IMG/VR virus record: IMGVR_UViG_3300032236_000747
Span: 290,681-354,680 of that record
Direction: 5' to 3' (one strand)
Length of the DNA stretch: 64,000 nt
A program made the position numbers and the translations under genes. This document shows, in pieces, positions 9,599 to 63,067 of this stretch. Under the pieces are notes generated by a model. The model saw nothing but the letters and a program-made list of their open reading frames with translations. It ran no database searches and was not told the origin of the DNA. The first letter of the stretch is position 1; every line of letters begins with the position of its first letter.

Positions 9599-12500
9599 AT
9601 GGCCTTCATTCAGAAGTTATTCACAACACTACAAAACTACGATAATGGCGATACTCGTATTGGCGAGCTCAACCGTATTTGGTATGACTCTAATCGTAAT
9701 GCCTTCTACATATCTGACGGCCAAACAGAAGGCGGTATACTAATTGGTGGCGGTGGTGGTGGCGGAACTTACACACTATTAACAGCAACTACTACCCGCC
9801 TAGGTGGTGTTAGAATCGGTGCTGGTATTCAAGTTGATTATCGCGGTGTTATTAGTGTAAACACATCTACGCTAGCAGGACCACAAGGTCCTAAAGGCGA
9901 CACTGGTCCTAAAGGGGATACTGGAACACAAGGATCAGTTGGGGCTCAAGGCGATCCCGGTATAGGAGTTCCTGTCGGCGGCGTTGCTGGACAAGTGCTG
10001 GCTAAAATTGACGGTGTTGATTATAATACATATTGGGTTGATCAAACTGGTGGTACAGGTAATGGTAGCGTAATACAAAGTGATATAGCTCCTACTCCTG
10101 CAAATACTACGACTCTTTGGTATGATACAGTAGGCGGTCGTAGTTATGTGTATTATTACGGGGGTTGGGTTGACGCTAGCCCAGGAATAGGCGGGATACC
10201 TGGACCAAAAGGCGATACAGGTACGCAAGGACCTACTGGACTACAAGGAGACATAGGTCCAAAAGGTGATACAGGTACTCAGGGACTAATAGGTCCAATG
10301 GGTCCGAAAGGCGATACAGGTACTCGAGGCCTTACTGGTGATATAGGCCCAGTTGGACCAAAGGGAGATACCGGAACACAGGGATTGATAGGACCAACAG
10401 GACCTAAAGGGGACACTGGTACACAAGGTATTCAAGGACCGATTGGTCTAACTGGAAACACTGGAACACAGGGTATACAAGGAATTCCGGGCGAAGGCGT
10501 TCCGGTAGGCGGAACTGCCGGGCAAGTATTAACCAAGATTGACGGTGTTGATTACAATACACACTGGGTTGATGCTAATTTTTCTAGTTCAACTGCTACT
10601 GCTGGTGTAAGTGATATTACCGCAGGGACAGGAACTTATGTATCTGCTAATACAGGTTCAGTGAGCATCTGGGTTGATCCAAACGTAGTCGAAGGCACGG
10701 TAGCTCCTGCATCTACAGCTTCATTTTGGTATGATACTAATGTAGGTCGACTATTCATATATTATAATGGGTCTTGGATTGATGCTAGTCCGGGAACTAC
10801 TGGTATACCTGGTCCAAAGGGAGACACTGGAACTACTGGTCCAACTGGACTACAGGGAGATATTGGCCCTAAAGGTGATACCGGTACAGCAGCTACCCTA
10901 GTTATAGGAACAGTTACCTTAGGAACTTATACAAGTGTAATTAATGTAGGCGATCAATACAATGCTGTGTTTGACTTTGTATTACAGCAAGGACCTAAAG
11001 GTGATGCTGGGCTCAAAGGCGACACAGGAACCACAGGTGCAACTGGCGCACAAGGACCTAAAGGTGATACTGGCACCCAAGGAATACAAGGCATACAAGG
11101 TTTTCAGGGAATACAAGGCATTAAAGGTGATACTGGCACCACCGGAGCAACTGGTGCTACAGGCAGTGTTGGTCCAAAAGGTGATACCGGTACACAGGGT
11201 ATTCAAGGTATTCAGGGACCAAAAGGCGATACAGGAACTACCGGCGCACAAGGTATCCAAGGCATACAAGGTATCCAGGGCGTAACGGGTAGTACAGGTA
11301 CTCAAGGACCAAAAGGCGATACTGGCTCAATTGGCATAGCTACATTAAATTTAGGCACAGGTACATACGGCACACTAACATCGCAGACATTAAGTTTATG
11401 GATCGGCCAAGATGTTTCTGCTACAAGTAATGTAACATTTAACTCTGTGGCTATTAGTAATCTTGGTAGCATTTTATCATCTCAAGTAAACATTGATGCA
11501 TTTATTACAGTCTATACCTTAACTAATGTTGTTGACTATAGTTCTACTGCTACTTTGGCATCGGGTGTTTACGGTAACATCAATGGAGTTCAACCTCCGT
11601 GGACTGTATTTGATCTAAGTCCCGGACCTTCAGGTACTCCTGTAAGTACTATTGCTATTAACGATAAACTAACAGGTGCTGGTATTATTCCTAGTACCGT
11701 AGAAGATCGCGGCACCGGAACTTATGCATCTTATGTTATTGTTAATTTAGATCTAGCTGGCCTAGGACAGATACAACCTTTAGTTGGGGCGGCATTTAAC
11801 CTTGTACGCCCACTACAAAAAGCTGGCTTGGACATTACTACACAAAACAACACAGACATTTTCCTAAACAGCAATGGTCTAGGTGATGTACTAGTTAACA
11901 CCAACATTCTACCAGTTGCCACCAATGTAAGTAATTTAGGAAGTCCAGACTTTAGATGGAAGAGTTTGTATGTTGGCCCAGGTACTATCTATGTCTTAGA
12001 TGAAACATTAGGCAAAGATATTAGCATTGGCGCTCGTGACGGACTACTATATGTACAAAACGGTGCTGGGCTTGTAGTAGGTGAGTTTACTCTTATTGAC
12101 AATCAGATTAAGATTGCCAATCCCGATCGTGATATTATTATTGGAACTACTACTGCTACAGGTAGTGTAGTATTAAATCGTCCTATTAGAGTTAACACAC
12201 TAGCAGGACAAACTTCATTTAGTGTAGATAGACTAGGTCTAACTACAATCCACCCACTTATCTCAATGAGCTCTACTCAATCAGCATTGAATATTGTGGG
12301 CAACACTAGCGGACTACAGCAACCTCGTAATTTTAACGATACAATGTTGCAGATTACAGGTGCAGACAATACTGCTACTCGTGTAAGTTTAGATTCATTT
12401 GGTACAGGCACATATCCAGTTATTGCTGGTCGTCAAGCAGGCGGAACAGTAGCGTCTCCAAGTCAAACAAAATTAAACGATACGCTGTTAAGATTTAGTG

Positions 12501-15500
12501 CCCAGGGTTGGGGGACTACAGGATATGTAAGTACTATTGCTCGTATAAACATGCGAGCTCTACAAGATTTTACTGACACCGCCGCAGGCACAGGAATACG
12601 TTTTCAATTAACTCCTATAAACACAACTACAATACAAACTGTTACAGTAGACATCACTGCTACAGGTATAAGTTTTGTTGGTAACTCTATTGGCGGAATC
12701 ACATTCAGTAACAATGACAGACTAACTTACTTCCCAACACCTGTGGGACAAGCCGGCTTATATTTAAAGTCAGATGGTACTACAATGAGTTGGCAAACAG
12801 GAGGTGCTGGCGCCAAAGGTGATACCGGTACAGCAGCTACAATTACAATAGGTACTGTTACAGTTTCTACAACTACAGCAAGTGTAACCAATGTAGGTAA
12901 CTCTAGTAGTGCTATACTTAATTTTGTCTTACAACAAGGTCCACAAGGTATCCAGGGAGCTACCGGTAGCACAGGAACACAGGGACCCAAAGGCGATACA
13001 GGTACTACTGGCGCACAGGGCATACAAGGTATTCAAGGCATTCAGGGAGCAACCGGAACCAGTGCGACAGTTATGGTTGGACTAGTTACTACAGGTTCAA
13101 CAGCTCTAGTTACTAACACAGGAACAAGTGCTAACGCGGTACTTAACTTCCAAATTCCATGGATACCGGGCCCACAGGGCGCAACTGGTGCTACGGGAAG
13201 TACAGGTACACAAGGACCTAAAGGGGATACCGGAACACAGGGTATTCAAGGACCTATTGGGCCAACTGGAACATTTACAGGTAGTGTAGTTACTCTAGCA
13301 TCTGCTGATACTGCGGCACTGACTTATACATCATCAACTGGCATATTCTCATTCACTCCTAACAATGTCTATAAGACATTGTCTAGTTTAAGTGATGTTA
13401 ATGTTCCAGCACCCGGCAACAATCAAGTACTAACCTGGAGTACCGGCACTAATCGTTGGATTCCTACAACAGTAAACGGTGTTGGTGTTCCTATTACAGG
13501 TATTGCCTACTATGGTACATTCTACGACGTGGGCGCGGATCAAACAGCGCCACTGACAACCAGCAGTTATGTTGTAAGAATAGATCACACTGACGGTAGC
13601 AATGGCATCAGCATTGTTGACAATAATCAAATAACATTTGCCTACGGCGGAACTTATGAAGTAGAGTTTAGCATACAGTTCCAAAATACAGATACTAAAG
13701 ATGCCACTGTTAGTGTATGGTTTAGAAAGAACGGCGCAGACATAGCAGATTCAAACAGCATATTCACAGCGCCAAGTAAGCAAAACGGTAATGGATTCTT
13801 GATAGCAGTCACTCCGTTTATCGTCACAGTCAACGCCGGCGACTATGTACAGATTATGTGGTCAAGTGACAATACAGTAACCAAAATCGTCACAACAGCG
13901 GCTGGAACTACCCCAACTGTTCCACGCACACCGGGCGTTATTATCACAGTGGTGCCGGTTACCTCAGTGGTTATCCCAGGCACCGTTGAGAGTTTAACAG
14001 TAACGGGCAATGCCAGTGCCAATAACTTTATCTCAGCGTATCTGCCCATAGTGTCAAGTGGTACTACTACTGTGCTGTCTGTTACAAGTCCGCACTATAT
14101 ATCAGTAAGTGGTGTATCAACACAGACTATCAAACTGCCAAACGCTACCTTATTGACTGTAGGACAAAGTTACAAGATTGACAACAACTCAAGTGGCAAT
14201 GTTTACATACAAGATGCTACTGGTGCTCAGATTGGCGGTGCTCTGTTACCGGGTGCGGCCACTGAAGGTAGAGTTATTAATGTAGGTACAACAGCAGGCA
14301 CATGGGATGGTTGGAACTATGTTCCTGGCAATGTATCATTTGGCACAAGTCAGATGGTGTTTACTGGCGGGACCATTGTAGCCAGCACATTCACTGGTAG
14401 TTTAGTAGGTACTGCTACCACAGCAACCTACGCACAATCATTTAATACTGCGACTCTAGTAACTACTGCTGTTAGTGCTACTACTGCCACTAACGCTGGT
14501 TACGCATATTCATTTAATACAAACACAGTCGTAACTACAGCAGTTACAGCAACTAACGCTGGGTATGCCTACTCGTTCAACACATCAACCCTAGTATTGA
14601 AAGCAACTACAGCTACACTGGCACAAACTGTTACTGCGGCCGCACAGCCTGCTATCACAAGTGTAGGAACACTAACAAGTCTATCACTTCAGGGCAGTAT
14701 AACATTTAATGATGCCACTACACAATCTACAGCATGGACTGGTAGTACATATAGAATAATCAAAGTTGCTGACGGTTTTGGAGTAGGCCTACCATTCCAG
14801 TCTTATGTAACTGCTGATACCAGCACAGGCATTATTGTTTCCGCATTAACTGGTATTCCAGCAAGCCCTACATATAAAACTTGGACATTTGGGTTTGACG
14901 GAGTCTTAACATTCCCAGATAACTCAACACAAACAGTTGCGTGGAATACAAGCACAGCAGTTTATTATTCACAGATAAGGAATGCGCCTTCTACTACAGG
15001 CACAGCAGTATTCAATATTGTTAGTGCTACTAACATAACAGTTGGCGGAACAACAATACAAAACTTGTTTAGTGTATCAACAGCTACAGTGAGCAATACT
15101 GCTACTAGTCTTGTCTATAATACTAGCACCGGTGTTTATACATTTACACCATTTAGTCTAAACACCAGTACACTAATGGCTCGAGCTGTCACTGTTACAA
15201 GTTCAACACAAGCGGCTATTACCGCACTTGGTACATTAACGTCTCTATCAGTTAGCGGAGCATCAACAGTTAGTGGGCTTGCTACCTTTAACTATACAGG
15301 CGGTGGATCAACTTCAACTATTTCTGTCAGTGGGCAAAATAGCAAAGGTGGCGCACTATATCACGACTTCCTAAGTGCTACTAACGGGTTAGCCACTGCT
15401 ACCAATGCTACCAAATATTTCCGTCTAAACAACGTAGGCACCTTAGAAATATTGAATAGTGCTTATAATGCAACTGTATTCTCAGTAACTGATAACGGAT

Positions 15501-16525
15501 ATATTGCTATCAATGCGGCATCCGGTGTTTCAAACGGTTTGCCTGGTAATAATGCTATAGCGATGAATAACAACAGTTACATCTACGATGATGGTAACTA
15601 TCACCTTACAAGTAAGTCTGGTAGCATTTGGATCAATGCCAACGGTGGTAATGATGTTAATATAAACACACAAGTCCCTAGTGGTACTATGCCAGGCGGG
15701 TTGAATGTACAGGGTGCTATAACAAGTCAAGGCTCTGGTACAGCCGCTACATCGTTTATATCAGGTGTAAACGCATATAGTGGCGTAGCACTACAGCTGA
15801 CTCCAAACGGTACAGGTGCGGCAAACCAAGCTATTCGTGATACATCAAGTGCGGCAAGCACAATGTATTTTGACGTTAATACTGGTGGTAGTGCTCACGG
15901 CCAATTCCAATTTAGATCAAGCAATGCGTTTAGTCAACTCTTGGTTGTAAGTAATAGTGCCGTAACAGTTAACAGACAAATGTTGATAGGTGGTGGTAGT
16001 CAAGGCGCCTATGTTACTATTAACGGAACAAACACTTACAACATCAATGGGCCTTTTGGATACTTAAACGGTGGCGGCGCAGGCGCCATCAACAGCAGTG
16101 GATCAACGGGTAATCAAGGGTTTTCATTACAATGTAGTGGACGTATTCAAGCTAATGAAGTTGACGTTCCTTCAGACGAACGATTAAAAGACATACAGGG
16201 CACTATTCCTTTAGATAAGGCACTACAGTTTGTTCGAGCCGTAGATGGTATCTTGTATACTTGGAAGCCAGGATTTGGCGACAACGGATTAAAGTCAGGG
16301 TTTAATGCTCAAGGTGTATACAAAGCTGGATTTGATCATATGGTTGTTCCTGTGCCAAATGATCGTGTAGCGGGTTCAACTGATGCTGATGGATTTACAA
16401 GCCCAGATAAGTTCCAATTAAGTTTAAACTATCAAGAAGCTATCCCATATCATCACGAAGTTATCAAGCACTTGCTAGATCGTATTGAGCAGCTAGAAGC
16501 TACAGTAGCCAAGTTAACTAAATAA
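9599..16525 (+). CDS. Giant collagen-like tail fibre with C-terminal peptidase S74 intramolecular chaperone
   Basis: Several G-X-Y tracts (GPKGDTG repeats), duplicated modules, C-terminal SDERLKDI...GFNAQ...LNYQ and coiled coil. Confidence 0.9.
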   Translation: MAFIQKLFTTLQNYDNGDTRIGELNRIWYDSNRNAFYISDGQTEGGILIGGGGGGGTYTLLTATTTRLGGVRIGAGIQVDYRGVISVNTSTLAGPQGPKGDTGPKGDTGTQGSVGAQGDPGIGVPVGGVAGQVLAKIDGVDYNTYWVDQTGGTGNGSVIQSDIAPTPANTTTLWYDTVGGRSYVYYYGGWVDASPGIGGIPGPKGDTGTQGPTGLQGDIGPKGDTGTQGLIGPMGPKGDTGTRGLTGDIGPVGPKGDTGTQGLIGPTGPKGDTGTQGIQGPIGLTGNTGTQGIQGIPGEGVPVGGTAGQVLTKIDGVDYNTHWVDANFSSSTATAGVSDITAGTGTYVSANTGSVSIWVDPNVVEGTVAPASTASFWYDTNVGRLFIYYNGSWIDASPGTTGIPGPKGDTGTTGPTGLQGDIGPKGDTGTAATLVIGTVTLGTYTSVINVGDQYNAVFDFVLQQGPKGDAGLKGDTGTTGATGAQGPKGDTGTQGIQGIQGFQGIQGIKGDTGTTGATGATGSVGPKGDTGTQGIQGIQGPKGDTGTTGAQGIQGIQGIQGVTGSTGTQGPKGDTGSIGIATLNLGTGTYGTLTSQTLSLWIGQDVSATSNVTFNSVAISNLGSILSSQVNIDAFITVYTLTNVVDYSSTATLASGVYGNINGVQPPWTVFDLSPGPSGTPVSTIAINDKLTGAGIIPSTVEDRGTGTYASYVIVNLDLAGLGQIQPLVGAAFNLVRPLQKAGLDITTQNNTDIFLNSNGLGDVLVNTNILPVATNVSNLGSPDFRWKSLYVGPGTIYVLDETLGKDISIGARDGLLYVQNGAGLVVGEFTLIDNQIKIANPDRDIIIGTTTATGSVVLNRPIRVNTLAGQTSFSVDRLGLTTIHPLISMSSTQSALNIVGNTSGLQQPRNFNDTMLQITGADNTATRVSLDSFGTGTYPVIAGRQAGGTVASPSQTKLNDTLLRFSAQGWGTTGYVSTIARINMRALQDFTDTAAGTGIRFQLTPINTTTIQTVTVDITATGISFVGNSIGGITFSNNDRLTYFPTPVGQAGLYLKSDGTTMSWQTGGAGAKGDTGTAATITIGTVTVSTTTASVTNVGNSSSAILNFVLQQGPQGIQGATGSTGTQGPKGDTGTTGAQGIQGIQGIQGATGTSATVMVGLVTTGSTALVTNTGTSANAVLNFQIPWIPGPQGATGATGSTGTQGPKGDTGTQGIQGPIGPTGTFTGSVVTLASADTAALTYTSSTGIFSFTPNNVYKTLSSLSDVNVPAPGNNQVLTWSTGTNRWIPTTVNGVGVPITGIAYYGTFYDVGADQTAPLTTSSYVVRIDHTDGSNGISIVDNNQITFAYGGTYEVEFSIQFQNTDTKDATVSVWFRKNGADIADSNSIFTAPSKQNGNGFLIAVTPFIVTVNAGDYVQIMWSSDNTVTKIVTTAAGTTPTVPRTPGVIITVVPVTSVVIPGTVESLTVTGNASANNFISAYLPIVSSGTTTVLSVTSPHYISVSGVSTQTIKLPNATLLTVGQSYKIDNNSSGNVYIQDATGAQIGGALLPGAATEGRVINVGTTAGTWDGWNYVPGNVSFGTSQMVFTGGTIVASTFTGSLVGTATTATYAQSFNTATLVTTAVSATTATNAGYAYSFNTNTVVTTAVTATNAGYAYSFNTSTLVLKATTATLAQTVTAAAQPAITSVGTLTSLSLQGSITFNDATTQSTAWTGSTYRIIKVADGFGVGLPFQSYVTADTSTGIIVSALTGIPASPTYKTWTFGFDGVLTFPDNSTQTVAWNTSTAVYYSQIRNAPSTTGTAVFNIVSATNITVGGTTIQNLFSVSTATVSNTATSLVYNTSTGVYTFTPFSLNTSTLMARAVTVTSSTQAAITALGTLTSLSVSGASTVSGLATFNYTGGGSTSTISVSGQNSKGGALYHDFLSATNGLATATNATKYFRLNNVGTLEILNSAYNATVFSVTDNGYIAINAASGVSNGLPGNNAIAMNNNSYIYDDGNYHLTSKSGSIWINANGGNDVNINTQVPSGTMPGGLNVQGAITSQGSGTAATSFISGVNAYSGVALQLTPNGTGAANQAIRDTSSAASTMYFDVNTGGSAHGQFQFRSSNAFSQLLVVSNSAVTVNRQMLIGGGSQGAYVTINGTNTYNINGPFGYLNGGGAGAINSSGSTGNQGFSLQCSGRIQANEVDVPSDERLKDIQGTIPLDKALQFVRAVDGILYTWKPGFGDNGLKSGFNAQGVYKAGFDHMVVPVPNDRVAGSTDADGFTSPDKFQLSLNYQEAIPYHHEVIKHLLDRIEQLEATVAKLTK

Positions 16526-57007: not shown

Positions 57008-57901
57008 ATGAAGCAGTACCACATTATTTGTAGCGACAATGTTTCCGCTTTGGCACAACTGCCTGAGAATAGCATTGATGCCTGTATCACTGATCCTCCA
57101 TACGGCATGGATATTGCGGGCGCAGGATGGGATAAGAATGTCCCTCCAAGAGCAACTTGGGAAGCTGTATTTCGTGTGCTCAAGCCCGGCGCATTTGTAC
57201 TAAGCTTCTGTAATCCAGAGTTCTATCATAGAATGGCCGTAAACGTAGAAGACGCAGGATTTATTCCTAAAGATATGATTATCTGGATGGTCACTACAAA
57301 GATGGCCAAGGCAAACAGACTTAAGCCAGCACACGAGCCTATATTTGTAGCACAGAAGCCCCTAGACGGTACCATTGAAAATAATGTAGCTACATGGGGA
57401 TGCGGGCGCATTAACACAACTACTACTCGTGTACCTTGGGACGGCAAACCTCCCAAAGGATGGATCAAGGGAGGAGTTAAGCGCAGAGCATTCGGCGGTG
57501 ATGTTGCTAAGGCAGCAGACGCAGTCACCGAAACTGAAGACGCTAATCCAAATGGCCGTTATCCCACAGATATTATTGGTCATTTTGACGAACCCGATCA
57601 TCAAAAGTATTTCTATGCTCCTAGAGCAACACGCAAAGAACGTGGAGAGTATAATGACCATCCTACTCCCAAACCTATTAATCTAATGCGTTATCTGTGT
57701 AGAGTGTATGCTCCTCAAGGCGGAGTAGTGCTTGACCCATTCATGGGCAGTGGTAGCACAGGCATTGCTGCTCTACAAGAGGGCATGGAGTTCTACGGTA
57801 TAGATTTAAGTCAACATTACTGCGATATTGTACACAAACGTATTACAGATCATGTTGTAAATCAGTTGCCCGCTGATAAACTATTTGACTACGAACCCTA
57901 A
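57008..57901 (+). CDS. DNA N6-adenine/N4-cytosine methyltransferase (beta class)
   Basis: DPPY motif IV, HPTPKP, VLDPFMGSGSTG motif I. Confidence 0.93.
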   Translation: MKQYHIICSDNVSALAQLPENSIDACITDPPYGMDIAGAGWDKNVPPRATWEAVFRVLKPGAFVLSFCNPEFYHRMAVNVEDAGFIPKDMIIWMVTTKMAKANRLKPAHEPIFVAQKPLDGTIENNVATWGCGRINTTTTRVPWDGKPPKGWIKGGVKRRAFGGDVAKAADAVTETEDANPNGRYPTDIIGHFDEPDHQKYFYAPRATRKERGEYNDHPTPKPINLMRYLCRVYAPQGGVVLDPFMGSGSTGIAALQEGMEFYGIDLSQHYCDIVHKRITDHVVNQLPADKLFDYEP

Positions 57902-57913
57902 GTGTGTTATAAT
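57885..57913 (+). promoter_or_regulatory. Sigma70-like promoter
   Basis: TTGACT-N17-TATAAT with TG extension. Confidence 0.75.
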
Positions 57914-57939: not shown

Positions 57940-58470
57940 ATGGCAAAACATTTAATGGTTGACTTGGAAACTATGGCAGTTACCCCAAGAGCAACAATAC
58001 TTACACTAGGTGCAGTTCATTTTAATCCACACGGTAACGGTATCGGTGAACAGTTATACTTTCGCATTGACATTGATGCTCAGGATGCACTAGGTCGTGA
58101 AGTAGATCCAAACACTCTCGATTGGTGGAGCAAGCAAGATCCTGCTATCATGGAAGAAGCATTTAGTCCAGACAATCGTTTGCCGTTAGATGAAGCTGTT
58201 GACAAGTTTCATAAGTTTGCTTGGGGATGCGATGCGTTTTGGAGTCACGGTGCTGTGTTCGACTTAATCATTATTGAAGATTTGTATCGTCAAATGGGGC
58301 GTGTTCTTCCTTGGCAGTTCTGGCAATGTCGTGACACACGCACATTGTTTGATCTAGGATTTGACCCGGATATGCCACAAGGGGGCAAACACGATGCCTT
58401 ACAGGATGCTATAAGACAAGCAGTTGGTGTTCAAAATATGTACACTAAACTAAAAATCAGGCCTCGTTAA
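57940..58470 (+). CDS. DEDDh 3'-5' exonuclease (DUF5051/Rv2179c-like)
   Basis: MVDLETM, FDLII, RDTRT, HDALQDA. Confidence 0.88.
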   Translation: MAKHLMVDLETMAVTPRATILTLGAVHFNPHGNGIGEQLYFRIDIDAQDALGREVDPNTLDWWSKQDPAIMEEAFSPDNRLPLDEAVDKFHKFAWGCDAFWSHGAVFDLIIIEDLYRQMGRVLPWQFWQCRDTRTLFDLGFDPDMPQGGKHDALQDAIRQAVGVQNMYTKLKIRPR

Positions 58471-58521: not shown

Positions 58522-58785
58522 ATGAATCAACAAATTAAAAAACTTGCCGGTCGAGCATTAGACGCCTCAGTACCGCAAACTTGGACAACCTTGACTGCTT
58601 ACGATTTAAATAAGTTTACAGAAAAATTCGCCGAGTTGATTGTCAAGGAATGTATTGAACGAATTACCACATATGATTTGGTGCCCGGTCATTCTGCTAA
58701 ATGGGAAGACATTTACGATATTCATGCTAGGTTGTTACAAGACTTAGGCGAAGATTTGAAAGAACATTTCGGAGTTGAAGAATGA
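58522..58785 (+). CDS. Hypothetical protein, FAELIV-EC/HFGVEE family
   Basis: Paralog of 58967-59203. Confidence 0.7.
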   Translation: MNQQIKKLAGRALDASVPQTWTTLTAYDLNKFTEKFAELIVKECIERITTYDLVPGHSAKWEDIYDIHARLLQDLGEDLKEHFGVEE

Positions 58786-58970
58786 ACGAATATTTCACAA
58801 AACAAATTGAACAAGGTGCCACAGAAATGTTTTTCTATGGACTAGAACGACCGGAACCTTTTACTGTAAGCATTATGAGTCACAAAGGCTCATTGGATAC
58901 ATTTCCTACCAACTTGAAATATGTGCGTCATTTAACTGATGGTATGCCCTTGTTCAAGGAAACAGTATGA
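58782..58970 (+). CDS. Hypothetical protein
   Basis: ATGA overlaps. Confidence 0.6.
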   Translation: MNEYFTKQIEQGATEMFFYGLERPEPFTVSIMSHKGSLDTFPTNLKYVRHLTDGMPLFKETV

Positions 58971-59203
58971 ACGAACGAATTCAACAACTTGCTCTACAGG
59001 CTAGAGAATATGCTAATTCTAAAGAGCCATATGAAAAGATAAAAAACAAAGCCTGGATCGATGTTTATGATGAAAAGTTCGCCGAGTTGATTGTTCGTGA
59101 ATGTATCAACCAGTGTGCCGATAATGATAGCAATGACGAATGGGATAAAGGTGTTCGTTGGGCGGCGGCACAGATTAAACAACATTTCGGAGTCGAAGAA
59201 TGA
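58967..59203 (+). CDS. Hypothetical protein, FAELIV-EC/HFGVEE family
   Basis: Paralog of 58522-58785. Confidence 0.7.
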   Translation: MNERIQQLALQAREYANSKEPYEKIKNKAWIDVYDEKFAELIVRECINQCADNDSNDEWDKGVRWAAAQIKQHFGVEE

Positions 59204-60018
59204 TAACGATTAATCTAGTTTCGGATTTACATTTAGACGTCTCTGGGTATTTAGATTTACCAGGCGGGGATGTTCTCATTTTAGCAGGCGACATCTGTGA
59301 AGCGAAAGAACTACACAAAGAGTTTCATAGTACTAAAGTAGTAGATCGAGAGCCCGGCGCTTTTCCCTGCCACGATTTCTTCGAGTTTGTCGTTCCACGC
59401 TATAAAAAAGTCTTTATGGTAATGGGCAATCACGAACACTATCGCGGCCGCTTTGACAAGACCTATAATCAACTTAAATCTATTCTTCCGCCTAATGTAA
59501 CTCTATTAGAAAACGAAGTAGTAGAATACGAAGGTGTGATGTTCCTTGGTGCTACATTGTGGACTGACCTTAACAAAGGCGATCCTATTACTGTGTATAC
59601 TATCAAGAATATGATGAATGAGTACAAGTGTGTGCAGAACTTCTATGAAGAAAAAGGTCTGTATCATAAACTGACTCCTGACCATACCGCCATGGTTCAT
59701 AGAGAAACCAAAGCGTATTTTAAAAAAGTTCTAGAAGAACACAAAGATAAACCTTTTGTTGTTATCACACACATGGCTCCTAGTTTCCAAAGCGTAAACT
59801 GGAAGTATGAAGGTCAAACAACCAGCAACGGTGGTTACTGTTCTAGCATGGAAGAGTTTATTTTGGATCACGAAAACATCAAAGTTTGGGTACACGGTCA
59901 TGTGCATGATCCGGTAGATTACACAATCGGTTGGGCCCGTGTACTTTGTAATCCACGTGGCTACCTACCTTGGGAAGCCGGTAATGGATTTGACCCAACA
60001 TTTACATTTGATATATGA
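59200..60018 (+). CDS. Calcineurin-like metallophosphoesterase
   Basis: SDLH, AGD, GNHE, THMAP, HGHVH motifs. Confidence 0.93.
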   Translation: MITINLVSDLHLDVSGYLDLPGGDVLILAGDICEAKELHKEFHSTKVVDREPGAFPCHDFFEFVVPRYKKVFMVMGNHEHYRGRFDKTYNQLKSILPPNVTLLENEVVEYEGVMFLGATLWTDLNKGDPITVYTIKNMMNEYKCVQNFYEEKGLYHKLTPDHTAMVHRETKAYFKKVLEEHKDKPFVVITHMAPSFQSVNWKYEGQTTSNGGYCSSMEEFILDHENIKVWVHGHVHDPVDYTIGWARVLCNPRGYLPWEAGNGFDPTFTFDI

Positions 60019-60242
60019 CCGCCGACTGGGGCGCCAAAGACAAATACAATGACTATCCTTACAAGATAGAAATATTTCCCATGGGCGGGCTCAAGGATAG
60101 TTGGGCACGTCAAGGTTGGTGTGCTGACAATGTAGGCGAAAGAGAAGAAGCCTGGGATTTTTACAGCGAACGATATGATCAGCAGGTATATGTATTTGCT
60201 AGACAGAAAGATGCTGTTAACTTTGCTTTAATATGGGTGTAA
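60015..60242 (+). CDS. Small protein, F-x-L-x-W C-terminal family
   Basis: Ends DAVNFALIWV. Confidence 0.65.
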   Translation: MTADWGAKDKYNDYPYKIEIFPMGGLKDSWARQGWCADNVGEREEAWDFYSERYDQQVYVFARQKDAVNFALIWV

Positions 60243-60243
60243 A

Positions 60244-60534
60244 GTGATCTCAAGTATTGTATGGGGAAGAAGTATTGGTTGGAATCTTGATTTTAGAAGT
60301 TCAAAGAAAAAAGGAATGGAATACACAATCATAGTAGATGGCCCAGGCTGTTATCCTTGGACCAAACATTTTGCTTGGCTTCCAGTTAAAACAATCACAG
60401 GTCTACGTGCTTGGGGTGTTACAGTTTACAAACGTAGGGTGTGGTTAGTGTGGGGCACAGGATTCCACATGGAACCACATGTAGAGTATGCTACATTATT
60501 TGAAGTACTAGCAGATGGCAGACGCGGTTACTAA
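60244..60534 (+). CDS. Small Trp-rich protein (FAWxPV family)
   Basis: KHFAWLPVK...EYATLFEVL; paralog of 60999. Confidence 0.65.
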   Translation: MISSIVWGRSIGWNLDFRSSKKKGMEYTIIVDGPGCYPWTKHFAWLPVKTITGLRAWGVTVYKRRVWLVWGTGFHMEPHVEYATLFEVLADGRRGY

Positions 60535-60790
60535 ACACCATAAAAAACTTAAAGGTACAATTCCACCTGTGGTCTTGCCACCGGGCGAGCATTTTGTTAT
60601 ATTAACTAAAGCAGACGTTGATGGAGAGCCGTGGTACACTGTGCGTATAAGCCCTAAAGTCCGAGATTGGTTAGTTAAACAACCTACTAATCAATGGTAT
60701 GAGCATTTTGGTAACAACCACTATAGGGTTGCGTGTACCTTTGACCTTAGTGAAAAACTATATACAACTATGTTGTTAACTTGGCTATGA
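60515..60790 (+). CDS. Small protein, F-x-L-x-W C-terminal family
   Basis: Ends LYTTMLLTWL. Confidence 0.65.
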   Translation: MADAVTKHHKKLKGTIPPVVLPPGEHFVILTKADVDGEPWYTVRISPKVRDWLVKQPTNQWYEHFGNNHYRVACTFDLSEKLYTTMLLTWL

Positions 60791-61002
60791 AAAAAGTAAC
60801 ACTCACAGATAAGTCTCCCAACGAAGTTATTGACATTGTTCGTGCTTTGCGAGAAGAAGGTCTAGTACAAGGCACTAACTTTGATTTTGCTTATCATCAA
60901 AGCAAATGGGACGAAATGATAGGAGAAATTCCTACGCAGGCTACGTTTACATTTTATAATGACAAGTATGCTACATTTTTTATATTAAAATATTGTAAAT
61001 GA
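60787..61002 (+). CDS. Small protein, F-x-L-K-Y C-terminal family
   Basis: Ends YATFFILKYCK; ATGA-coupled. Confidence 0.65.
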   Translation: MKKVTLTDKSPNEVIDIVRALREEGLVQGTNFDFAYHQSKWDEMIGEIPTQATFTFYNDKYATFFILKYCK

Positions 61003-61205
61003 AAAAAGAAATATTTGTTGCTAGGAAAATAGAAATACTATCTTGGAAAAAATGGTTTGCTTGGTATCCTGTAAAGATACACGGAAAAAGGGTATGGCTT
61101 AAAAATGTATATCGTCGTTGCATTAACACCTATGTTGATTACGATGATTGGAGTCGTTATGAGTATGGTACTTTATTTGATATATTGAAAGAAGACATAA
61201 CATGA
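60999..61205 (+). CDS. Small Trp-rich protein (FAWxPV family)
   Basis: KWFAWYPVK...EYGTLFDIL. Confidence 0.65.
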   Translation: MKKEIFVARKIEILSWKKWFAWYPVKIHGKRVWLKNVYRRCINTYVDYDDWSRYEYGTLFDILKEDIT

Positions 61206-61501
61206 AAGTTAACCCTAAAATAGAAGATGCTTTTCTTCCCATGTACGAAGATGATATTATTCCTCTTGAAGAAATAAAGAAAAAACGTGATCGATATTGG
61301 GCCATGTTGCGCAGAGCTAAAAACGAGTATTTAAGTCTAGTAGACGGCACAGAGTACAACGATGGTATTAATGGTTTCTATTATTTCATGCAGCAGAACT
61401 ACGGTCTTCAACCAGAGTTGATTGACGGCAACCTAGGATCAACGTATAATATAGTTGACGAAAAGAAATATCTATTGTTTTTACTAAAGTACGGATCATA
61501 G
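61202..61501 (+). CDS. Small protein ending in TAG, in frame with next ORF
   Basis: Ends KKYLLFLLKYGS-TAG-GCA-ACC-GCC-ATG. Confidence 0.7.
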   Translation: MKVNPKIEDAFLPMYEDDIIPLEEIKKKRDRYWAMLRRAKNEYLSLVDGTEYNDGINGFYYFMQQNYGLQPELIDGNLGSTYNIVDEKKYLLFLLKYGS

Positions 61502-61510
61502 GCAACCGCC

Positions 61511-61759
61511 ATGGAGTTAAAAATAAGTGAAGGTCGTGTATACGGTTCACGATATTATACAGTTGAAGTTGTTACTGGTCTGTTCTCCAGAGAAAAACTA
61601 ATAAAGATAGACGATGTAAAAAACTGGGTCACTGAAGCATTTGGCTCAACCTCTGCAAAAAGTATATTAGAACCCGGTAGCCGATGGTATTATACCTATG
61701 ATACTTTCTGGTTTCGTAATCAGAAAGATCTAACATTATTTGTGTTGAGATGGTCATGA
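61511..61759 (+). CDS. Small protein, LRWS family
   Basis: Ends KDLTLFVLRWS. Confidence 0.7.
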   Translation: MELKISEGRVYGSRYYTVEVVTGLFSREKLIKIDDVKNWVTEAFGSTSAKSILEPGSRWYYTYDTFWFRNQKDLTLFVLRWS

Positions 61760-61947
61760 GAGTTTTAAATAAAAAATACTGGCCTCACCAGTTCAATGTT
61801 AATCCCGATAAAATATCCGAAGCACGTAAATGGTGCTATAGTAGTTTTAAAAGCGGCAACTGGAAATCGTTTGATGTCGGTAATAATACAAAGTTTGCTT
61901 TTAAAAGAGGCATCGATGCTACTATGTTTTCACTGAGGTGGTCATGA
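61756..61947 (+). CDS. Small protein, LRWS family
   Basis: Ends DATMFSLRWS. Confidence 0.7.
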   Translation: MRVLNKKYWPHQFNVNPDKISEARKWCYSSFKSGNWKSFDVGNNTKFAFKRGIDATMFSLRWS

Positions 61948-62192
61948 AACCCGATAAACTAGAAACAATATTGGCACGAGCCGTATTAGAAGTAGGAGTA
62001 GGACGAAATGGTCGTTGGCAACTTACACCGGAGGCAAGGGTAATCACTGGCAATCCAAAATATGATGCACAAATTCATCATGTGTTGGTTGAGTATGGTA
62101 TAGAAGTAAAGTTAGACAAAAATAACAATATGGAAGATTACCGTGTAGTTGATGAAAAAAAGTTTATAATGTTTTTACTGAGGTGGTCATGA
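61944..62192 (+). CDS. Small protein, LRWS family
   Basis: Ends KKFIMFLLRWS. Confidence 0.7.
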   Translation: MKPDKLETILARAVLEVGVGRNGRWQLTPEARVITGNPKYDAQIHHVLVEYGIEVKLDKNNNMEDYRVVDEKKFIMFLLRWS

Positions 62193-62581
62193 TTGAGTGG
62201 ATTAAAGATAAATGGCTTACCTGGCGCACAGGCAAGGACAAAGATCAGCGTGATTGGGAAGCGTGGTATGAAACTAATGTAGTTTATCGTGCGTCTACAA
62301 TCCCTAACATGTTTATGAACTTTAAACATGTTATTGAAGTTTCACACGAAAAGTTTTTAGACTACTGCGAACCATTTGACTGGGTCCCTTGCGAAGATGC
62401 ACTACAATACTTCTGGCCACAACGCGAACTAGGCAATAACGCTGTCTGGAGATTTGAACGAGTCATTTGGGACAAGTGGGAACAAAGATGGCACATAAGC
62501 TCACTCGGCGACGAAGACAAAGTGTTTGTAGCAACAAATAATCAACGAGATGCTGTAATGATAGCATTAAAATATGCATGA
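62189..62581 (+). CDS. Hypothetical protein, same C-terminal family
   Basis: Ends RDAVMIALKYA. Confidence 0.7.
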   Translation: MIEWIKDKWLTWRTGKDKDQRDWEAWYETNVVYRASTIPNMFMNFKHVIEVSHEKFLDYCEPFDWVPCEDALQYFWPQRELGNNAVWRFERVIWDKWEQRWHISSLGDEDKVFVATNNQRDAVMIALKYA

Positions 62582-62784
62582 AACTCAAAGTTAAATCATT
62601 GAGCTCTATAGAACAGTGGTGCGAAAAGCATCTGGGCCCACGGTTATACTATATTCATGATCGTCGAGGTGGCATGGTATGGAGAATAAAAAAGGATCCT
62701 GCGGGCGGCTGGGAACTAGAAATAGACAATGACCATCAAGCACTATTGTTGATATTAAAATTCAGTGATGAAATATCAACCTAA
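62578..62784 (+). CDS. Small protein, same C-terminal family
   Basis: QALLLILKF near the C-terminus. Confidence 0.65.
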   Translation: MKLKVKSLSSIEQWCEKHLGPRLYYIHDRRGGMVWRIKKDPAGGWELEIDNDHQALLLILKFSDEIST

Positions 62785-63067
62785 CGAATCCTATGATGAA
62801 TGGGCTACCCGAGTTTCTATGTATGAAAAGGGTAGAGCTCTTCAGCGAATCGCCAGCGGAGAAAACATAGAAGAAGTAATGGAAGAAATGAGTCGTAGAA
62901 TCACTGACAAACTATTACATCCAATCCGCAAAGTTATAACAGAATCCGGACCTAAAACAACCGAAGCAGAAATGGAAGAAAGCAGGCAACGTTATAAAGC
63001 AGAAATGGATAAAAAAGGGCTAACTGCTGATCAAGTTGATGGCCAAATATTTGACAAAAATCAATAA
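62768..63067 (+). CDS. Hypothetical protein (C-terminal half resembles the glutamyl-tRNA reductase dimerisation helix, tentative)
   Basis: EEMSRRITDKLLHP motif. Confidence 0.5.
   Translation: MKYQPNESYDEWATRVSMYEKGRALQRIASGENIEEVMEEMSRRITDKLLHPIRKVITESGPKTTEAEMEESRQRYKAEMDKKGLTADQVDGQIFDKNQ

What the first reader, a model, noticed from the sequence alone, without database searches (positions are those of the whole stretch)
60015..62784. Tandem array of about 11 small paralog-like ORFs sharing a C-terminal F-x-L-[RK]-[WY] signature and a repeated junction
Seen: highly divergent bodies with conserved ends (FALIWV, MLLTWL, FFILKY, LFLLKY, LFVLRWS, MFSLRWS, MFLLRWS, MIALKY, LLILKF). Three ends share TGAG(G/A)TGGTCATGA (61746, 61934, 62179), in which GAGGTG is the next SD. 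Inference: an expandable effector array with a common fold or docking helix and variable specificity surfaces (for example anti-defence or host-binding decoys), shuffled via the junction.
Basis: partly seen in the sequence, partly recalled or inferred. Interest (0 to 1): 0.6.

Follow-up and report, generated by a model that had tools for sequence, protein, structure and literature searches.

The report
Phage array of uncharacterised mini-domain genes
A giant T4-like phage carries a run of eleven tiny genes, nine built on one uncharacterised, virus-only mini-domain whose last codons also act as the ribosome-binding site and overlapping start of the next gene.

Summary
Between a metallophosphoesterase gene and dnaK, a 354,680-bp T4-like metagenomic phage packs 11 small co-directional ORFs. 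Nine end in a strand-plus-helix motif (F-x-F…D-A-x-x-F-x-L-[KR]-[WY], at most a few residues before the stop). Two (o02, o05) belong to another family.

Six of the nine match one profile. AlphaFold2 folds o08 (pLDDT 84) as a β-α-β-β-α mini-domain. The o06 model keeps the α-β-β-α core. o10 shares only the last ~15 residues.

The domain has no match in Pfam, PHROGs, NCBIfam or by sequence in the PDB. It is nevertheless abundant: 3,697 50%-identity clusters, about 97–100% viral. In 24 related phage contigs it always sits at the C-terminus, in single clusters of 5–20 genes. Gene content and order differ between relatives, while each subfamily is under purifying selection.

The repeated junction TGAG[GA]TGGTCATGA encodes L-R-W-S-stop with an ATGA stop/start overlap. 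Family-wide, the motif Arg uses the rare codon AGG in 71% of cases against 9% elsewhere, which creates GAGG just before the next ATG. The junction is therefore a built-in Shine-Dalgarno and coupling signal. I found no sign that it is a recombination site.

The protein function is untested. It is most likely a set of accessory or host-takeover binders.

The parts
59200..60018 (+). Metallophosphoesterase gene, the conserved left anchor of the array. Its stop overlaps the o01 start (ATGA).
   Evidence: PHROG 1649 at 1.2e-53. The same gene (cluster 27) precedes the array in L003, L005, L019 and L025.
60015..60242 (+). o01, 75 aa, family member with a variant end (FALIWV).
   Evidence: It is a row of A2, so its match (4.1e-11) is by construction.
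60244..60534 (+). o02, 96 aa from a GTG start. It is NOT a family member; it belongs to a second family (CYPW…FAWxPV…VWGTGFHMEP).
   Evidence: Paralog of o05 (blastp 1e-8). Orthologs occur in 8 related loci, and their N-termini (IVWGRSIGWN) support the GTG start. dN/dS is 0.19.
60515..60790 (+). o03, 91 aa, family member (end MLLTWL). Its orthologs elsewhere carry an extra N-terminal extension.
   Evidence: Ortholog cluster 1 has 13 members.
60787..61002 (+). o04, 71 aa, family member (end FFILKYCK). Its start overlaps the o03 stop (ATGA).
   Evidence: Ortholog cluster 12.
60999..61205 (+). o05, 68 aa, paralog of o02; not a family member.
   Evidence: Only weak PHROG hits, the best being phrog_7749 at 0.006.
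61202..61501 (+). o06, 99 aa, divergent member. A long N-terminal helix precedes the α-β-β-α core.
   Evidence: AlphaFold2 pLDDT 78: H22-47, H56-67, E69-74, E77-84, H87-97. hhalign against the core family aligns 43 columns in register but weakly (probability 38%). Paralog of o09 (3.5e-7).
61511..61759 (+). o07, 82 aa, canonical member (end LFVLRWS).
   Evidence: Best own-genome match to the A2 profile (3.1e-17), though o07 is itself a row of A2. Independent support: homologs P0076 and P0103 at 46-48% identity; ortholog cluster 4, dN/dS 0.29.
61756..61947 (+). o08, 63 aa, the minimal domain. β1 61786-61800, α1 61804-61845, β2 61861-61878, β3 61885-61902, α2 61909-61941.
   Evidence: AlphaFold2 with A2: pLDDT 84, pTM 0.67, E11-15 H17-30 E36-41 E44-49 H52-62.
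61944..62192 (+). o09, 82 aa, divergent member of the o06-like subfamily (end MFLLRWS).
   Evidence: The A2 profile sees only its last helix (E 0.08). One ortholog in L024.
62189..62581 (+). o10, 130 aa, member of a large, well-conserved ~130-aa family that shares only the terminal strand and helix with the others.
   Evidence: Most of the 348 hits are ~130-aa homologs of o10. 21 IMG/VR loci. hhalign against A2 aligns only the last 15 columns, probability 74%. dN/dS 0.17.
62578..62784 (+). o11, 68 aa, family member with a 7-residue tail after LLILKF.
   Evidence: It is a row of A2, so its match (1.1e-8) is by construction.
61746..61759 (+). Junction 1, TGAGATGGTCATGA. It encodes (L)-R-W-S-stop of o07, holds an SD-like GAGA, and its ATGA is the start of o08.
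61934..61947 (+). Junction 2, TGAGGTGGTCATGA. It encodes (L)-R-W-S-stop of o08, holds GAGG 5 nt before the ATG of o09, and has the ATGA overlap.
   Evidence: 23 of 24 nt identical to junction 3.
62179..62192 (+). Junction 3, TGAGGTGGTCATGA. It is the end of o09 and the start of o10.

Best explanation
The region is the variable accessory-gene block of a T4-like jumbo phage. It holds nine members of a very large, virus-restricted and so far uncurated family of small proteins (55-130 aa).

The family is built on a C-terminal mini-domain with the order β-α-β-β-α. Its core is formed by a Trp in helix 1, a Trp in strand 2, F-x-F in strand 3, and D-A…F-x-L-[KR]-[WY] in the last helix.

The family split long ago into many subfamilies. 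Each is conserved across phages and has its own surface residues and N-terminal additions. Different phages carry different subsets in different orders, always together in one cluster.

The genes are packed end to end and are probably translated as one coupled string. The domain ends 1-2 residues before the stop, and its final codons (Leu ending in G, Arg as AGG, Trp TGG, xxA, TGA) spell a Shine-Dalgarno-like GAGG(T) 4-5 nt before an ATG that overlaps the stop. Each gene therefore brings the ribosome-binding site and start context for whatever gene follows it.

What is shown: family membership, the predicted fold, clustering, variable content, purifying selection and the codon bias.

What is inferred: that translation is actually coupled, and that the proteins are non-essential host- or phage-protein binders (host takeover or counter-defence) that use one stable scaffold with subfamily-specific surfaces.
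For: Reality and clustering.
- The motif is enriched in the array.
- In 24 related loci, 200 ORFs match the motif profile. 199 are on the same strand, 183 end 0-2 residues after the match, and there are 5-20 per locus.
- In three whole viral contigs of 92-239 kb, all copies lie within a 3.6-6 kb stretch.

Fold.
- o08 is confidently modelled (pLDDT 84).
- The o06 model has the same α-β-β-α core.
- ESM-Atlas shape neighbours at TM 0.76-0.80 are clusters of 62, 547 and 4,872 members, 97-100% viral, with no common Pfam family.
- BFVD neighbours are uncharacterised proteins of uncultured Caudovirales phages.

Abundance.
- 3,697 representatives at E<=1e-3 among 1.84 billion.
- 133 of the 149 best have the domain within 2 residues of the C-terminus, and their median length is 84 aa.

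No curated family: Pfam, PHROGs and NCBIfam give nothing. A sequence search of the PDB gives nothing.

Real genes: dN/dS is 0.14-0.34 in eight ortholog groups, with dS near saturation.

Variable content and order. For example, subfamilies 52 and 53 are swapped between L006 and L007 while their flanks stay collinear.

Junction.
- The motif Arg is AGG in 64 of 90 cases against 60 of 674 elsewhere in the same proteins (Fisher 2e-37). It is the majority codon in 38 of 51 ortholog groups.
- The preceding Leu codon ends in G in 57 of 79 cases against 219 of 745 elsewhere, while the Phe codon shows no bias.
- 98 of 152 family genes end in ATGA against 109 of 397 other genes in the same loci. An SD-like core occurs in the last 12 coding nt of 82 of 152 family genes against 66 of 397 others.
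- TTGAGGTGGTCATGA is the commonest 15-mer gene end across unrelated contigs.
Against: - No experiment or expression data exist. The only sequencing run that holds the stretch is DNA and is probably the source sample.
- Only three of the nine window members use the Arg/SD version. The others have Lys, Ile or Thr and no obvious SD, so coupling through this signal is not universal here.
- o10 shares only ~15 residues with the core family, and o06/o09 align weakly (probability 38%). For those three, common descent of the whole domain is not established.
- Structural neighbours in the PDB are generic (best Z 6.3), so the fold gives no functional lead.
- The 'binder' function is an inference from size, diversity and genomic position alone.
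- The codon counts include related sequences, although the group-level count (38 of 51) holds.
Confidence: 0.55

Rival explanations
1. Cassette shuffling through the junction. The conserved 15-24 nt at each gene end acts as microhomology for recombination, which duplicates, deletes and reorders cassettes, much as PeSL elements do in T4-type hyperplastic regions.
For: - Content and order differ between relatives and change at gene boundaries.
- The same 15-mer ends many non-orthologous genes.
- The o08 and o09 ends are 23 of 24 nt identical.
- Some metagenomic members carry N-terminal fragments of other phage genes (Gp23, Laminin_G_3), as illegitimate recombination would produce.
Against: - The codon bias is limited to the SD-forming bases, and the Phe codon four codons upstream of the Arg is unbiased.
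- At equal amino-acid identity, the last 24 nt of non-orthologous members are no more similar within a genome than between genomes.
- 14-15 nt is short for homologous recombination.
- The subfamilies are ancient, with saturated dS.
Confidence: 0.2
2. The C-terminal motif is a free signal rather than part of a fold. It could be a docking peptide, a degron, a chaperone (DnaK) binding site or a packaging tag, analogous to the shared targeting sequence of the T4 internal proteins.
For: - The motif sits at the extreme C-terminus in 89% of the best hits.
- It is hydrophobic with a basic residue.
- A phage dnaK lies just downstream in this window, and a ClpP gene lies near the array in L003.
Against: - AlphaFold2 models the motif with high confidence as helix 2, which runs to the penultimate residue, in both o08 and o06.
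- Conservation extends over the whole ~55-residue domain.
- dnaK adjacency is not seen in the related loci examined.
Confidence: 0.08
3. The proteins are small nucleic-acid-binding regulators. A β-α-β-β-α module resembling KH, RRM-like or polymerase N-terminal domains would act on host or phage RNA or DNA.
For: The VIA-align neighbours include the N-terminal domain of E. coli Pol II (Z 6.3), KH domains (Z 5.2-5.3) and EF-G or ribosome-associated domains.
Against: - All Z values are under 7, which the tool notes is typical of chance arrangement.
- By inspection of the alignments, no conserved GXXG loop or basic patch is evident.
- Secretin N-domains, DCoH and designed proteins score equally.
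Confidence: 0.12
4. The ORFs are not real genes, and the motif reflects only an RNA/DNA signal repeated along a transcript.
For: The junction clearly carries a nucleic-acid-level signal.
Against: - Purifying selection acts on every ortholog group tested.
- The fold is confidently predicted.
- The family comprises thousands of protein clusters.
- All copies lie on the coding strand.
Confidence: 0.02

Closest known systems
Hyperplastic regions of T4-type phages, with PeSL-mediated modular shuffling (PMC2839356, PMC4122927)
   Same: Both are blocks of small, phylogenetically variable ORFs of unknown function set between conserved genes of a T4-like genome (gp23-type capsid protein; rIIA, NrdA). 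In both, gene content differs between relatives.
   Different: PeSLs are intergenic terminator/promoter composites. Here the genes overlap with no intergenic space. Promoter-like and terminator-like sites are at chance level. The repeated element lies inside the coding sequence and is best explained as SD plus ATGA. In addition, most ORFs here are homologous to one another.
Translational coupling by ATGA stop/start overlap with a Shine-Dalgarno inside the upstream gene (textbook bacterial and phage operon feature; from general knowledge)
   Same: An ATGA overlap, with GAGG 4-5 nt upstream of the ATG and lying within the preceding ORF.
   Different: Here the SD is written into the conserved C-terminal residues (L-R-W) of a protein domain family. 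The signal therefore travels with the family. It recurs in 38 of 51 ortholog groups that have Arg at the motif.
T4 internal-protein (IP) loci and phage anti-defence gene islands (from general knowledge; not tested here)
   Same: Tandem, polymorphic small genes with a shared terminal element and variable bodies. A role in phage-host conflict is suspected.
   Different: The IP signal is an N-terminal cleaved targeting peptide, and anti-CRISPR islands hold unrelated folds marked by an HTH gene. Here the shared element is a folded C-terminal domain. No HTH marker was noted, and no link to any defence system has been shown.
β-α-β-β-α two-layer modules: secretin N-domains / ring-building motif, KH-like domains, DCoH, YbjN
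   Same: Same order of secondary-structure elements and similar size. VIA-align Z 4.6-6.3, rmsd 1.9-3.1 Å over 52-63 residues.
   Different: There is no sequence similarity (2-16% identity) and no significant Foldseek hit (best E 0.18). By inspection, I noted no GXXG loop in the alignments. The resemblance is at the level of a common arrangement only.

Membership tests
Any curated protein family (Pfam-A, PHROGs v4, NCBIfam 20) | A profile match at or near the curated threshold | tested here: not met
   In Pfam and PHROGs, the ten array ORFs o01-o10 and 10 canonical relatives gave no hit better than E 0.0027, all far below the cut-offs. o11 and o12 were scanned in Pfam and PHROGs; only o12, which is not a family member, hits a family (GlutR_dimer). 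In NCBIfam, o01-o10 gave nothing meaningful.
New 'L-R-W-tail' phage mini-domain family (defined here) | A match to the ~68-position core profile (W in helix 1, W in strand 2, F-x-F, D-A, F-x-L-[KR]-[WY]) | tested here: met
   Met for o01, o03, o04, o07, o08 and o11 (E 3e-17 to 1e-8). These six were part of the seed alignment, so the independent support comes from 3,697 outside hits and from relatives in 24 loci. Not met over the full length for o06, o09 and o10, which match only the last helix or not at all.
New 'L-R-W-tail' phage mini-domain family (defined here) | Domain at the extreme C-terminus, at most 3 residues before the stop | tested here: met
   Eight of the nine window members qualify; o11 has a 7-residue tail. 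183 of 200 relatives have a tail of at most 2 residues, as do 133 of the 149 best database hits.
New 'L-R-W-tail' phage mini-domain family (defined here) | β-α-β-β-α fold | tested here: inconclusive
   Predicted for o08. The α-β-β-α core is predicted for o06.
PeSL (promoter-early stem-loop) shuffling cassettes of T4-type phages | An intergenic composite of a terminator stem-loop and an early promoter flanking the variable ORFs | tested here: not met
   The ORFs overlap by 4-20 nt; the only gaps are 1 nt (60243) and 9 nt (61502-61510). Promoter-like sites: 19 found against 21.5 expected. Terminator-like sites: 7 found against 5.5 expected. The only repeats longer than 14 nt lie in coding ends.
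KH domain | A conserved GXXG loop between two helices, and nucleic-acid binding | tested here: not met
   I saw no GXXG among the conserved columns listed for A2 and A5. The topology is β-α-β-β-α, with no helix pair. Binding was not testable.
Secretin N-domain / ring-building motif | Part of an exported, ring-forming membrane-complex protein | not tested
   The only evidence is fold-level similarity at Z 4.6-5.1. The window proteins are 63-130 aa stand-alone ORFs. No signal-peptide prediction was run.

The most novel reading that the evidence does not exclude
The family is a self-contained 'plug-and-play' gene cassette system. Each cassette encodes a binder on a common mini-scaffold. Its conserved last codons carry both the ribosome-binding site and start overlap for any downstream neighbour, and also a microhomology that lets cassettes be gained, lost and permuted. 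T4-like phages of uncultured aquatic hosts would thereby gain a combinatorial, integron-like arsenal of host-takeover or counter-defence proteins without a dedicated recombinase.
Probability: 0.15. Interest if true: 0.75.

Novelty: new variant of a known kind. Interest (0 to 1): 0.5.

Why it matters
This work defines a very large, virus-restricted protein domain: at least 3,697 clusters at 50% identity. The domain is missing from Pfam, PHROGs and NCBIfam, and tblastn with three family proteins found no match in 50,697 sequenced phage isolates. It nevertheless occupies a multi-kilobase block in many large uncultured phages.

It also gives a clear, testable example of dual coding. The conserved end of a protein domain is shaped jointly by protein folding and by the need to start translation of the next gene.

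If the proteins prove to be host- or defence-targeting binders, the family would be a rich source of small, stable scaffolds. It would also serve as a marker for the accessory 'arsenal' region of T4-like jumbo phages.

Tried and rejected
- DNA and protein searches of 50,697 phage isolates gave nothing. This covered megablast of the region and tblastn of o07, o10 and the canonical relative P0129. The metallophosphoesterase and rIIA genes find only relatives below 45% identity.
I used the o10-family alignment A3 instead.
- A PDB sequence search with the A2 profile gave only a chance hit at E 0.47. Foldseek against the PDB gave no hit at E<=1e-3. VIA-align gave only generic α/β neighbours, with Z<=6.3 for o08 and Z<4 for o06.
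- Sequencing runs: a single DNA holder, probably the source sample, and no RNA.
- I tested for gene conversion or concerted evolution at the junction and found no within-genome excess similarity.
- A recent tandem duplication of o07, o08 and o09 is rejected. The three fall in different ortholog groups, and their common junction is the family-wide consensus.
- A literature search found no description of the family.
- Cluster look-ups gave no informative names.

Full report
CONTEXT

The window is the last 64 kb of a single 354,680-bp contig. The contig is an IMG/VR virus record that CheckV rates 100% complete. Its GC content is 40%.

It encodes a gp23-type major capsid protein. It also encodes rIIA, the NrdA ribonucleotide reductase subunit and a nicotinamide phosphoribosyltransferase. 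It is therefore a T4-like jumbo phage known only from a metagenome. No phage isolate is close to it. Megablast finds nothing, and its metallophosphoesterase and rIIA have only relatives below 45% identity.

The local gene string is entirely on the + strand:
- DNA methylase, 57008-57901
- Rv2179c-like exonuclease, 57940-58470
- three small ORFs
- metallophosphoesterase, 59200-60018
- the eleven small ORFs of the finding, 60015-62784
- a 99-aa ORF (o12)
- dnaK, which runs off the contig end

THE OBSERVATION

The 14-mer TGAGRTGGTCATGA occurs three times, at 61746, 61934 and 62179. The chance expectation is 0.04.

A regex for the motif at ORF ends finds 13 of 1,689 ORFs genome-wide, and 7 of them are consecutive here. 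A profile of the last 32 residues retrieves only the nine array genes plus two marginal ORFs elsewhere.

Two ORFs are not part of the family. These are o02 (60244-60534) and o05 (60999-61205). They are paralogs of each other (blastp 1e-8) and belong to a second small family that is also conserved in relatives.

WHAT THE SHARED ELEMENT IS

Aligning the members shows more than a tail. A strand (F-x-F) and a helix (D-A-x-x-F-x-L-[KR]-[WY]) are preceded, in most members, by a helix carrying W[CLV]…[FY]G and a strand carrying W.

AlphaFold2 models the minimal member o08 (63 aa, with a 20-sequence alignment) at pLDDT 84 and pTM 0.67. The order is β1(11-15)-α1(17-30)-β2(36-41)-β3(44-49)-α2(52-62). 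The near-invariant residues are W26, F58, L60 and W62. These are what one expects of a hydrophobic core, not of a free docking peptide.

The divergent o06 (pLDDT 78) has a long N-terminal helix followed by the same α-β-β-α core.

Profile evidence sorts the nine into three groups.
- o01, o03, o04, o07, o08 and o11 match the core profile over most of its length. They were seed sequences, so the independent support comes from outside hits.
- o06 and o09 are paralogs of each other (3.5e-7). They align in register to the core family over 43 columns, but weakly (hhalign probability 38%).
- o10 shares only the last 15 columns (probability 74%).

A shared fold is therefore well supported for six members, plausible for two, and open for o10.

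HOW WIDESPREAD IT IS, AND WHETHER IT IS KNOWN

None of the 20 family proteins scanned hits Pfam or PHROGs, and none of the window proteins hits NCBIfam. The core profile finds nothing by sequence in the PDB.

Foldseek finds nothing significant in the PDB. The exhaustive aligner gives only generic two-layer α/β neighbours:
- E. coli Pol II N-terminal domain, Z 6.3
- designed ferredoxin-like proteins
- DCoH and YbjN
- KH domains
- secretin N-domains

These values are within the range the tool itself calls common.

The family is nevertheless large.
- hmmsearch of the core profile against 1.84 billion cluster representatives gives 3,697 hits at E<=1e-3.
- Among the 149 best, the median length is 84 aa, and 133 carry the domain within two residues of the C-terminus.
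- ESM-Atlas shape neighbours (TM 0.76-0.80) are clusters of 62, 547 and 4,872 members, 97-100% viral.
- BFVD neighbours are uncharacterised proteins of uncultured Caudovirales phages.
- o10 belongs to a tightly conserved ~130-aa family, whose members make up most of the 348 hits and whose Atlas clusters are 100% viral.
- tblastn of o07, o10 and a canonical relative finds nothing in 50,697 isolate records.

ARRAYS IN RELATIVES

I fetched 24 loci around o10 homologs from metagenomic and IMG/VR contigs.

An iterated profile finds 200 family ORFs in them. 199 are on the same strand, with 5-20 per locus. In three whole viral contigs of 92-239 kb, every copy lies within a 3.6-6 kb stretch. In several loci the metallophosphoesterase gene is again the left neighbour.

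Clustering all ORFs into ortholog groups gives the following:
- The window genes o02, o03, o04, o06, o07, o09 and o10 each have orthologs in other phages. o01, o05, o08 and o11 are singletons at the threshold used.
- The set present and its order differ from phage to phage. For example, groups 52 and 53 are swapped between L006 and L007 while the flanks stay collinear.

Ortholog groups show dN/dS of 0.14-0.34, with dS near saturation. These are real genes under purifying selection, and the paralogs are old. This is not a recent expansion in this phage.

It is not met.

THE JUNCTION

The three identical junctions encode (L)-R-W-S-stop. The TCA Ser codon and the TGA stop form ATGA with the next start.

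This is a property of the whole family, not of this phage. Among 152 unique family genes in the 24 loci plus the window:
- 98 end in ATGA, against 109 of 397 other genes in the same loci.
- The commonest 15-mer gene end is TTGAGGTGGTCATGA.
- The motif Arg is AGG in 64 of 90 cases, while AGG is 60 of 674 Arg codons elsewhere in the same proteins (Fisher 2e-37).
- Counted by ortholog group, 38 of 51 groups have AGG as the majority codon.
- The preceding Leu codon ends in G in 57 of 79 cases, against 219 of 745 elsewhere.
- The Phe codon four codons upstream of the Arg shows no bias: 82% against 77% TTT.

The bias is therefore limited to the bases that spell GAGG(T), 4-5 nt before the ATG. The one-residue tail (102 of the 130 unique genes in which a terminal [KR][WYF] is found) fixes that spacing.

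I conclude that the end of the domain doubles as a Shine-Dalgarno and coupling signal for the next gene. The function of that signal is inferred from sequence statistics and has not been measured.

I tested the alternative that the repeat reflects recombination or gene conversion. At equal amino-acid identity, the last 24 nt of non-orthologous members are no more alike within a genome than between genomes. There are no intergenic PeSL-like elements either. The genes overlap, and promoter-like and terminator-like sites are at chance level.

In the window itself, only o07, o08 and o09 use the Arg version. The other six have Lys, Ile or Thr and no evident SD.

FUNCTION

Nothing here measures function. 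The facts that bear on it are these:
- The proteins are very small and soluble-looking, built on a common stable core.
- Subfamily-specific residues and N-terminal additions are conserved across phages.
- The genes sit in the variable accessory block of T4-like genomes.
- The complement differs between phages.
- The family is almost exclusively viral.

The reading I think most likely is a set of non-essential proteins that bind host or phage components (host takeover or counter-defence) on one scaffold. I put that at roughly even odds.

A nucleic-acid-binding role is a weaker alternative, based only on low-Z fold neighbours. A free C-terminal signal (degron, chaperone site or packaging tag) is unlikely, given the predicted packing of the helix.

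COMPARISON WITH KNOWN SYSTEMS

The genomic setting matches the hyperplastic regions of T4-type phages (PMC2839356, PMC4122927). The defining PeSL element, however, is absent.

ATGA coupling with an upstream in-gene SD is a textbook feature. What is unusual is that the SD is embedded in the conserved terminal residues of a domain family, so it is inherited with the family.

The fold has the same topology as secretin-N / KH-like / DCoH modules, but membership in any of those families is not supported.

VERDICT

I rate this a new variant of a known kind. It is an undescribed but very abundant phage domain family, arranged in translationally linked arrays.

Noticed in passing
window 62768-63067 (+): o12 (99 aa) lies between the array and dnaK. 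It matches the Pfam dimerisation domain of glutamyl-tRNA reductase (GlutR_dimer) at E 7.7e-7, 29.8 bits, above the 22.9-bit cut-off. A stand-alone HemA-dimerisation-like protein directly upstream of a phage Hsp70 is odd.
   Followed up: no
window 58522-58785 and 58967-59203 (+): Two further small paralogs (blastp 1.6e-8). They share KFAELIV[KR]ECI and an identical HFGVEE end. The last 27 nt, including the ATGA overlap, are 93% identical. No family hit.
   Followed up: partly
window 60244-60534 and 60999-61205 (+): o02 and o05 form a second small family (CYPW…FAWxPV…VWGTGFHMEP…YAT). It is conserved in at least 8 related phage loci, with dN/dS 0.19. Ortholog N-termini support the GTG start of o02. 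The only family signal is a weak hit to PHROG 7749.
   Followed up: partly
metagenomic relatives P0202, P0233, P0182, P0247; L012:6501-6857 and other o03 orthologs: Some family members carry short N-terminal pieces of other phage proteins. Seven of 36 long members hit Gp23 capsid protein; in P0202 the hit covers PF07068 positions 3-38. Others carry a Laminin_G_3 fragment or DUF4116 repeats. Orthologs of o03 carry a GRQTGKS P-loop-like extension that o03 lacks. Its resemblance to a terminase Walker A motif is from memory, and Pfam gave no hit.
   Followed up: partly
G000:C1:16409-16624 (+) and 247524-247793 (-), outside the window: Two diverged, dispersed copies of the domain in the same genome (E 0.012 and 3.3e-4). 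Each lies on the same strand as an adjacent long ORF.
   Followed up: partly
P0148, P0185, P0147, P0222 (metagenomic proteins): These are single proteins that contain two tandem copies of the domain.
   Followed up: no
window 57885-57913 and 61422-61450 (+): The two best sigma-70-like sites, each 11 of 12 matches. The first lies in the gap before the exonuclease gene. The second lies about 60 nt before o07, just upstream of the only 9-nt intergenic gap in the array. The overall count of such sites is at chance level.
   Followed up: no
window 9599-16525 (+): A 2,308-aa ORF, the largest in the window. It was not examined.
   Followed up: no
protein cluster of P0151: A 1,069-aa fungal protein (Kalmusia sp., KAJ4291966.1) is listed in the same 90% cluster as a 56-aa family member. 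This is probably a clustering artefact or a contaminant.
   Followed up: no
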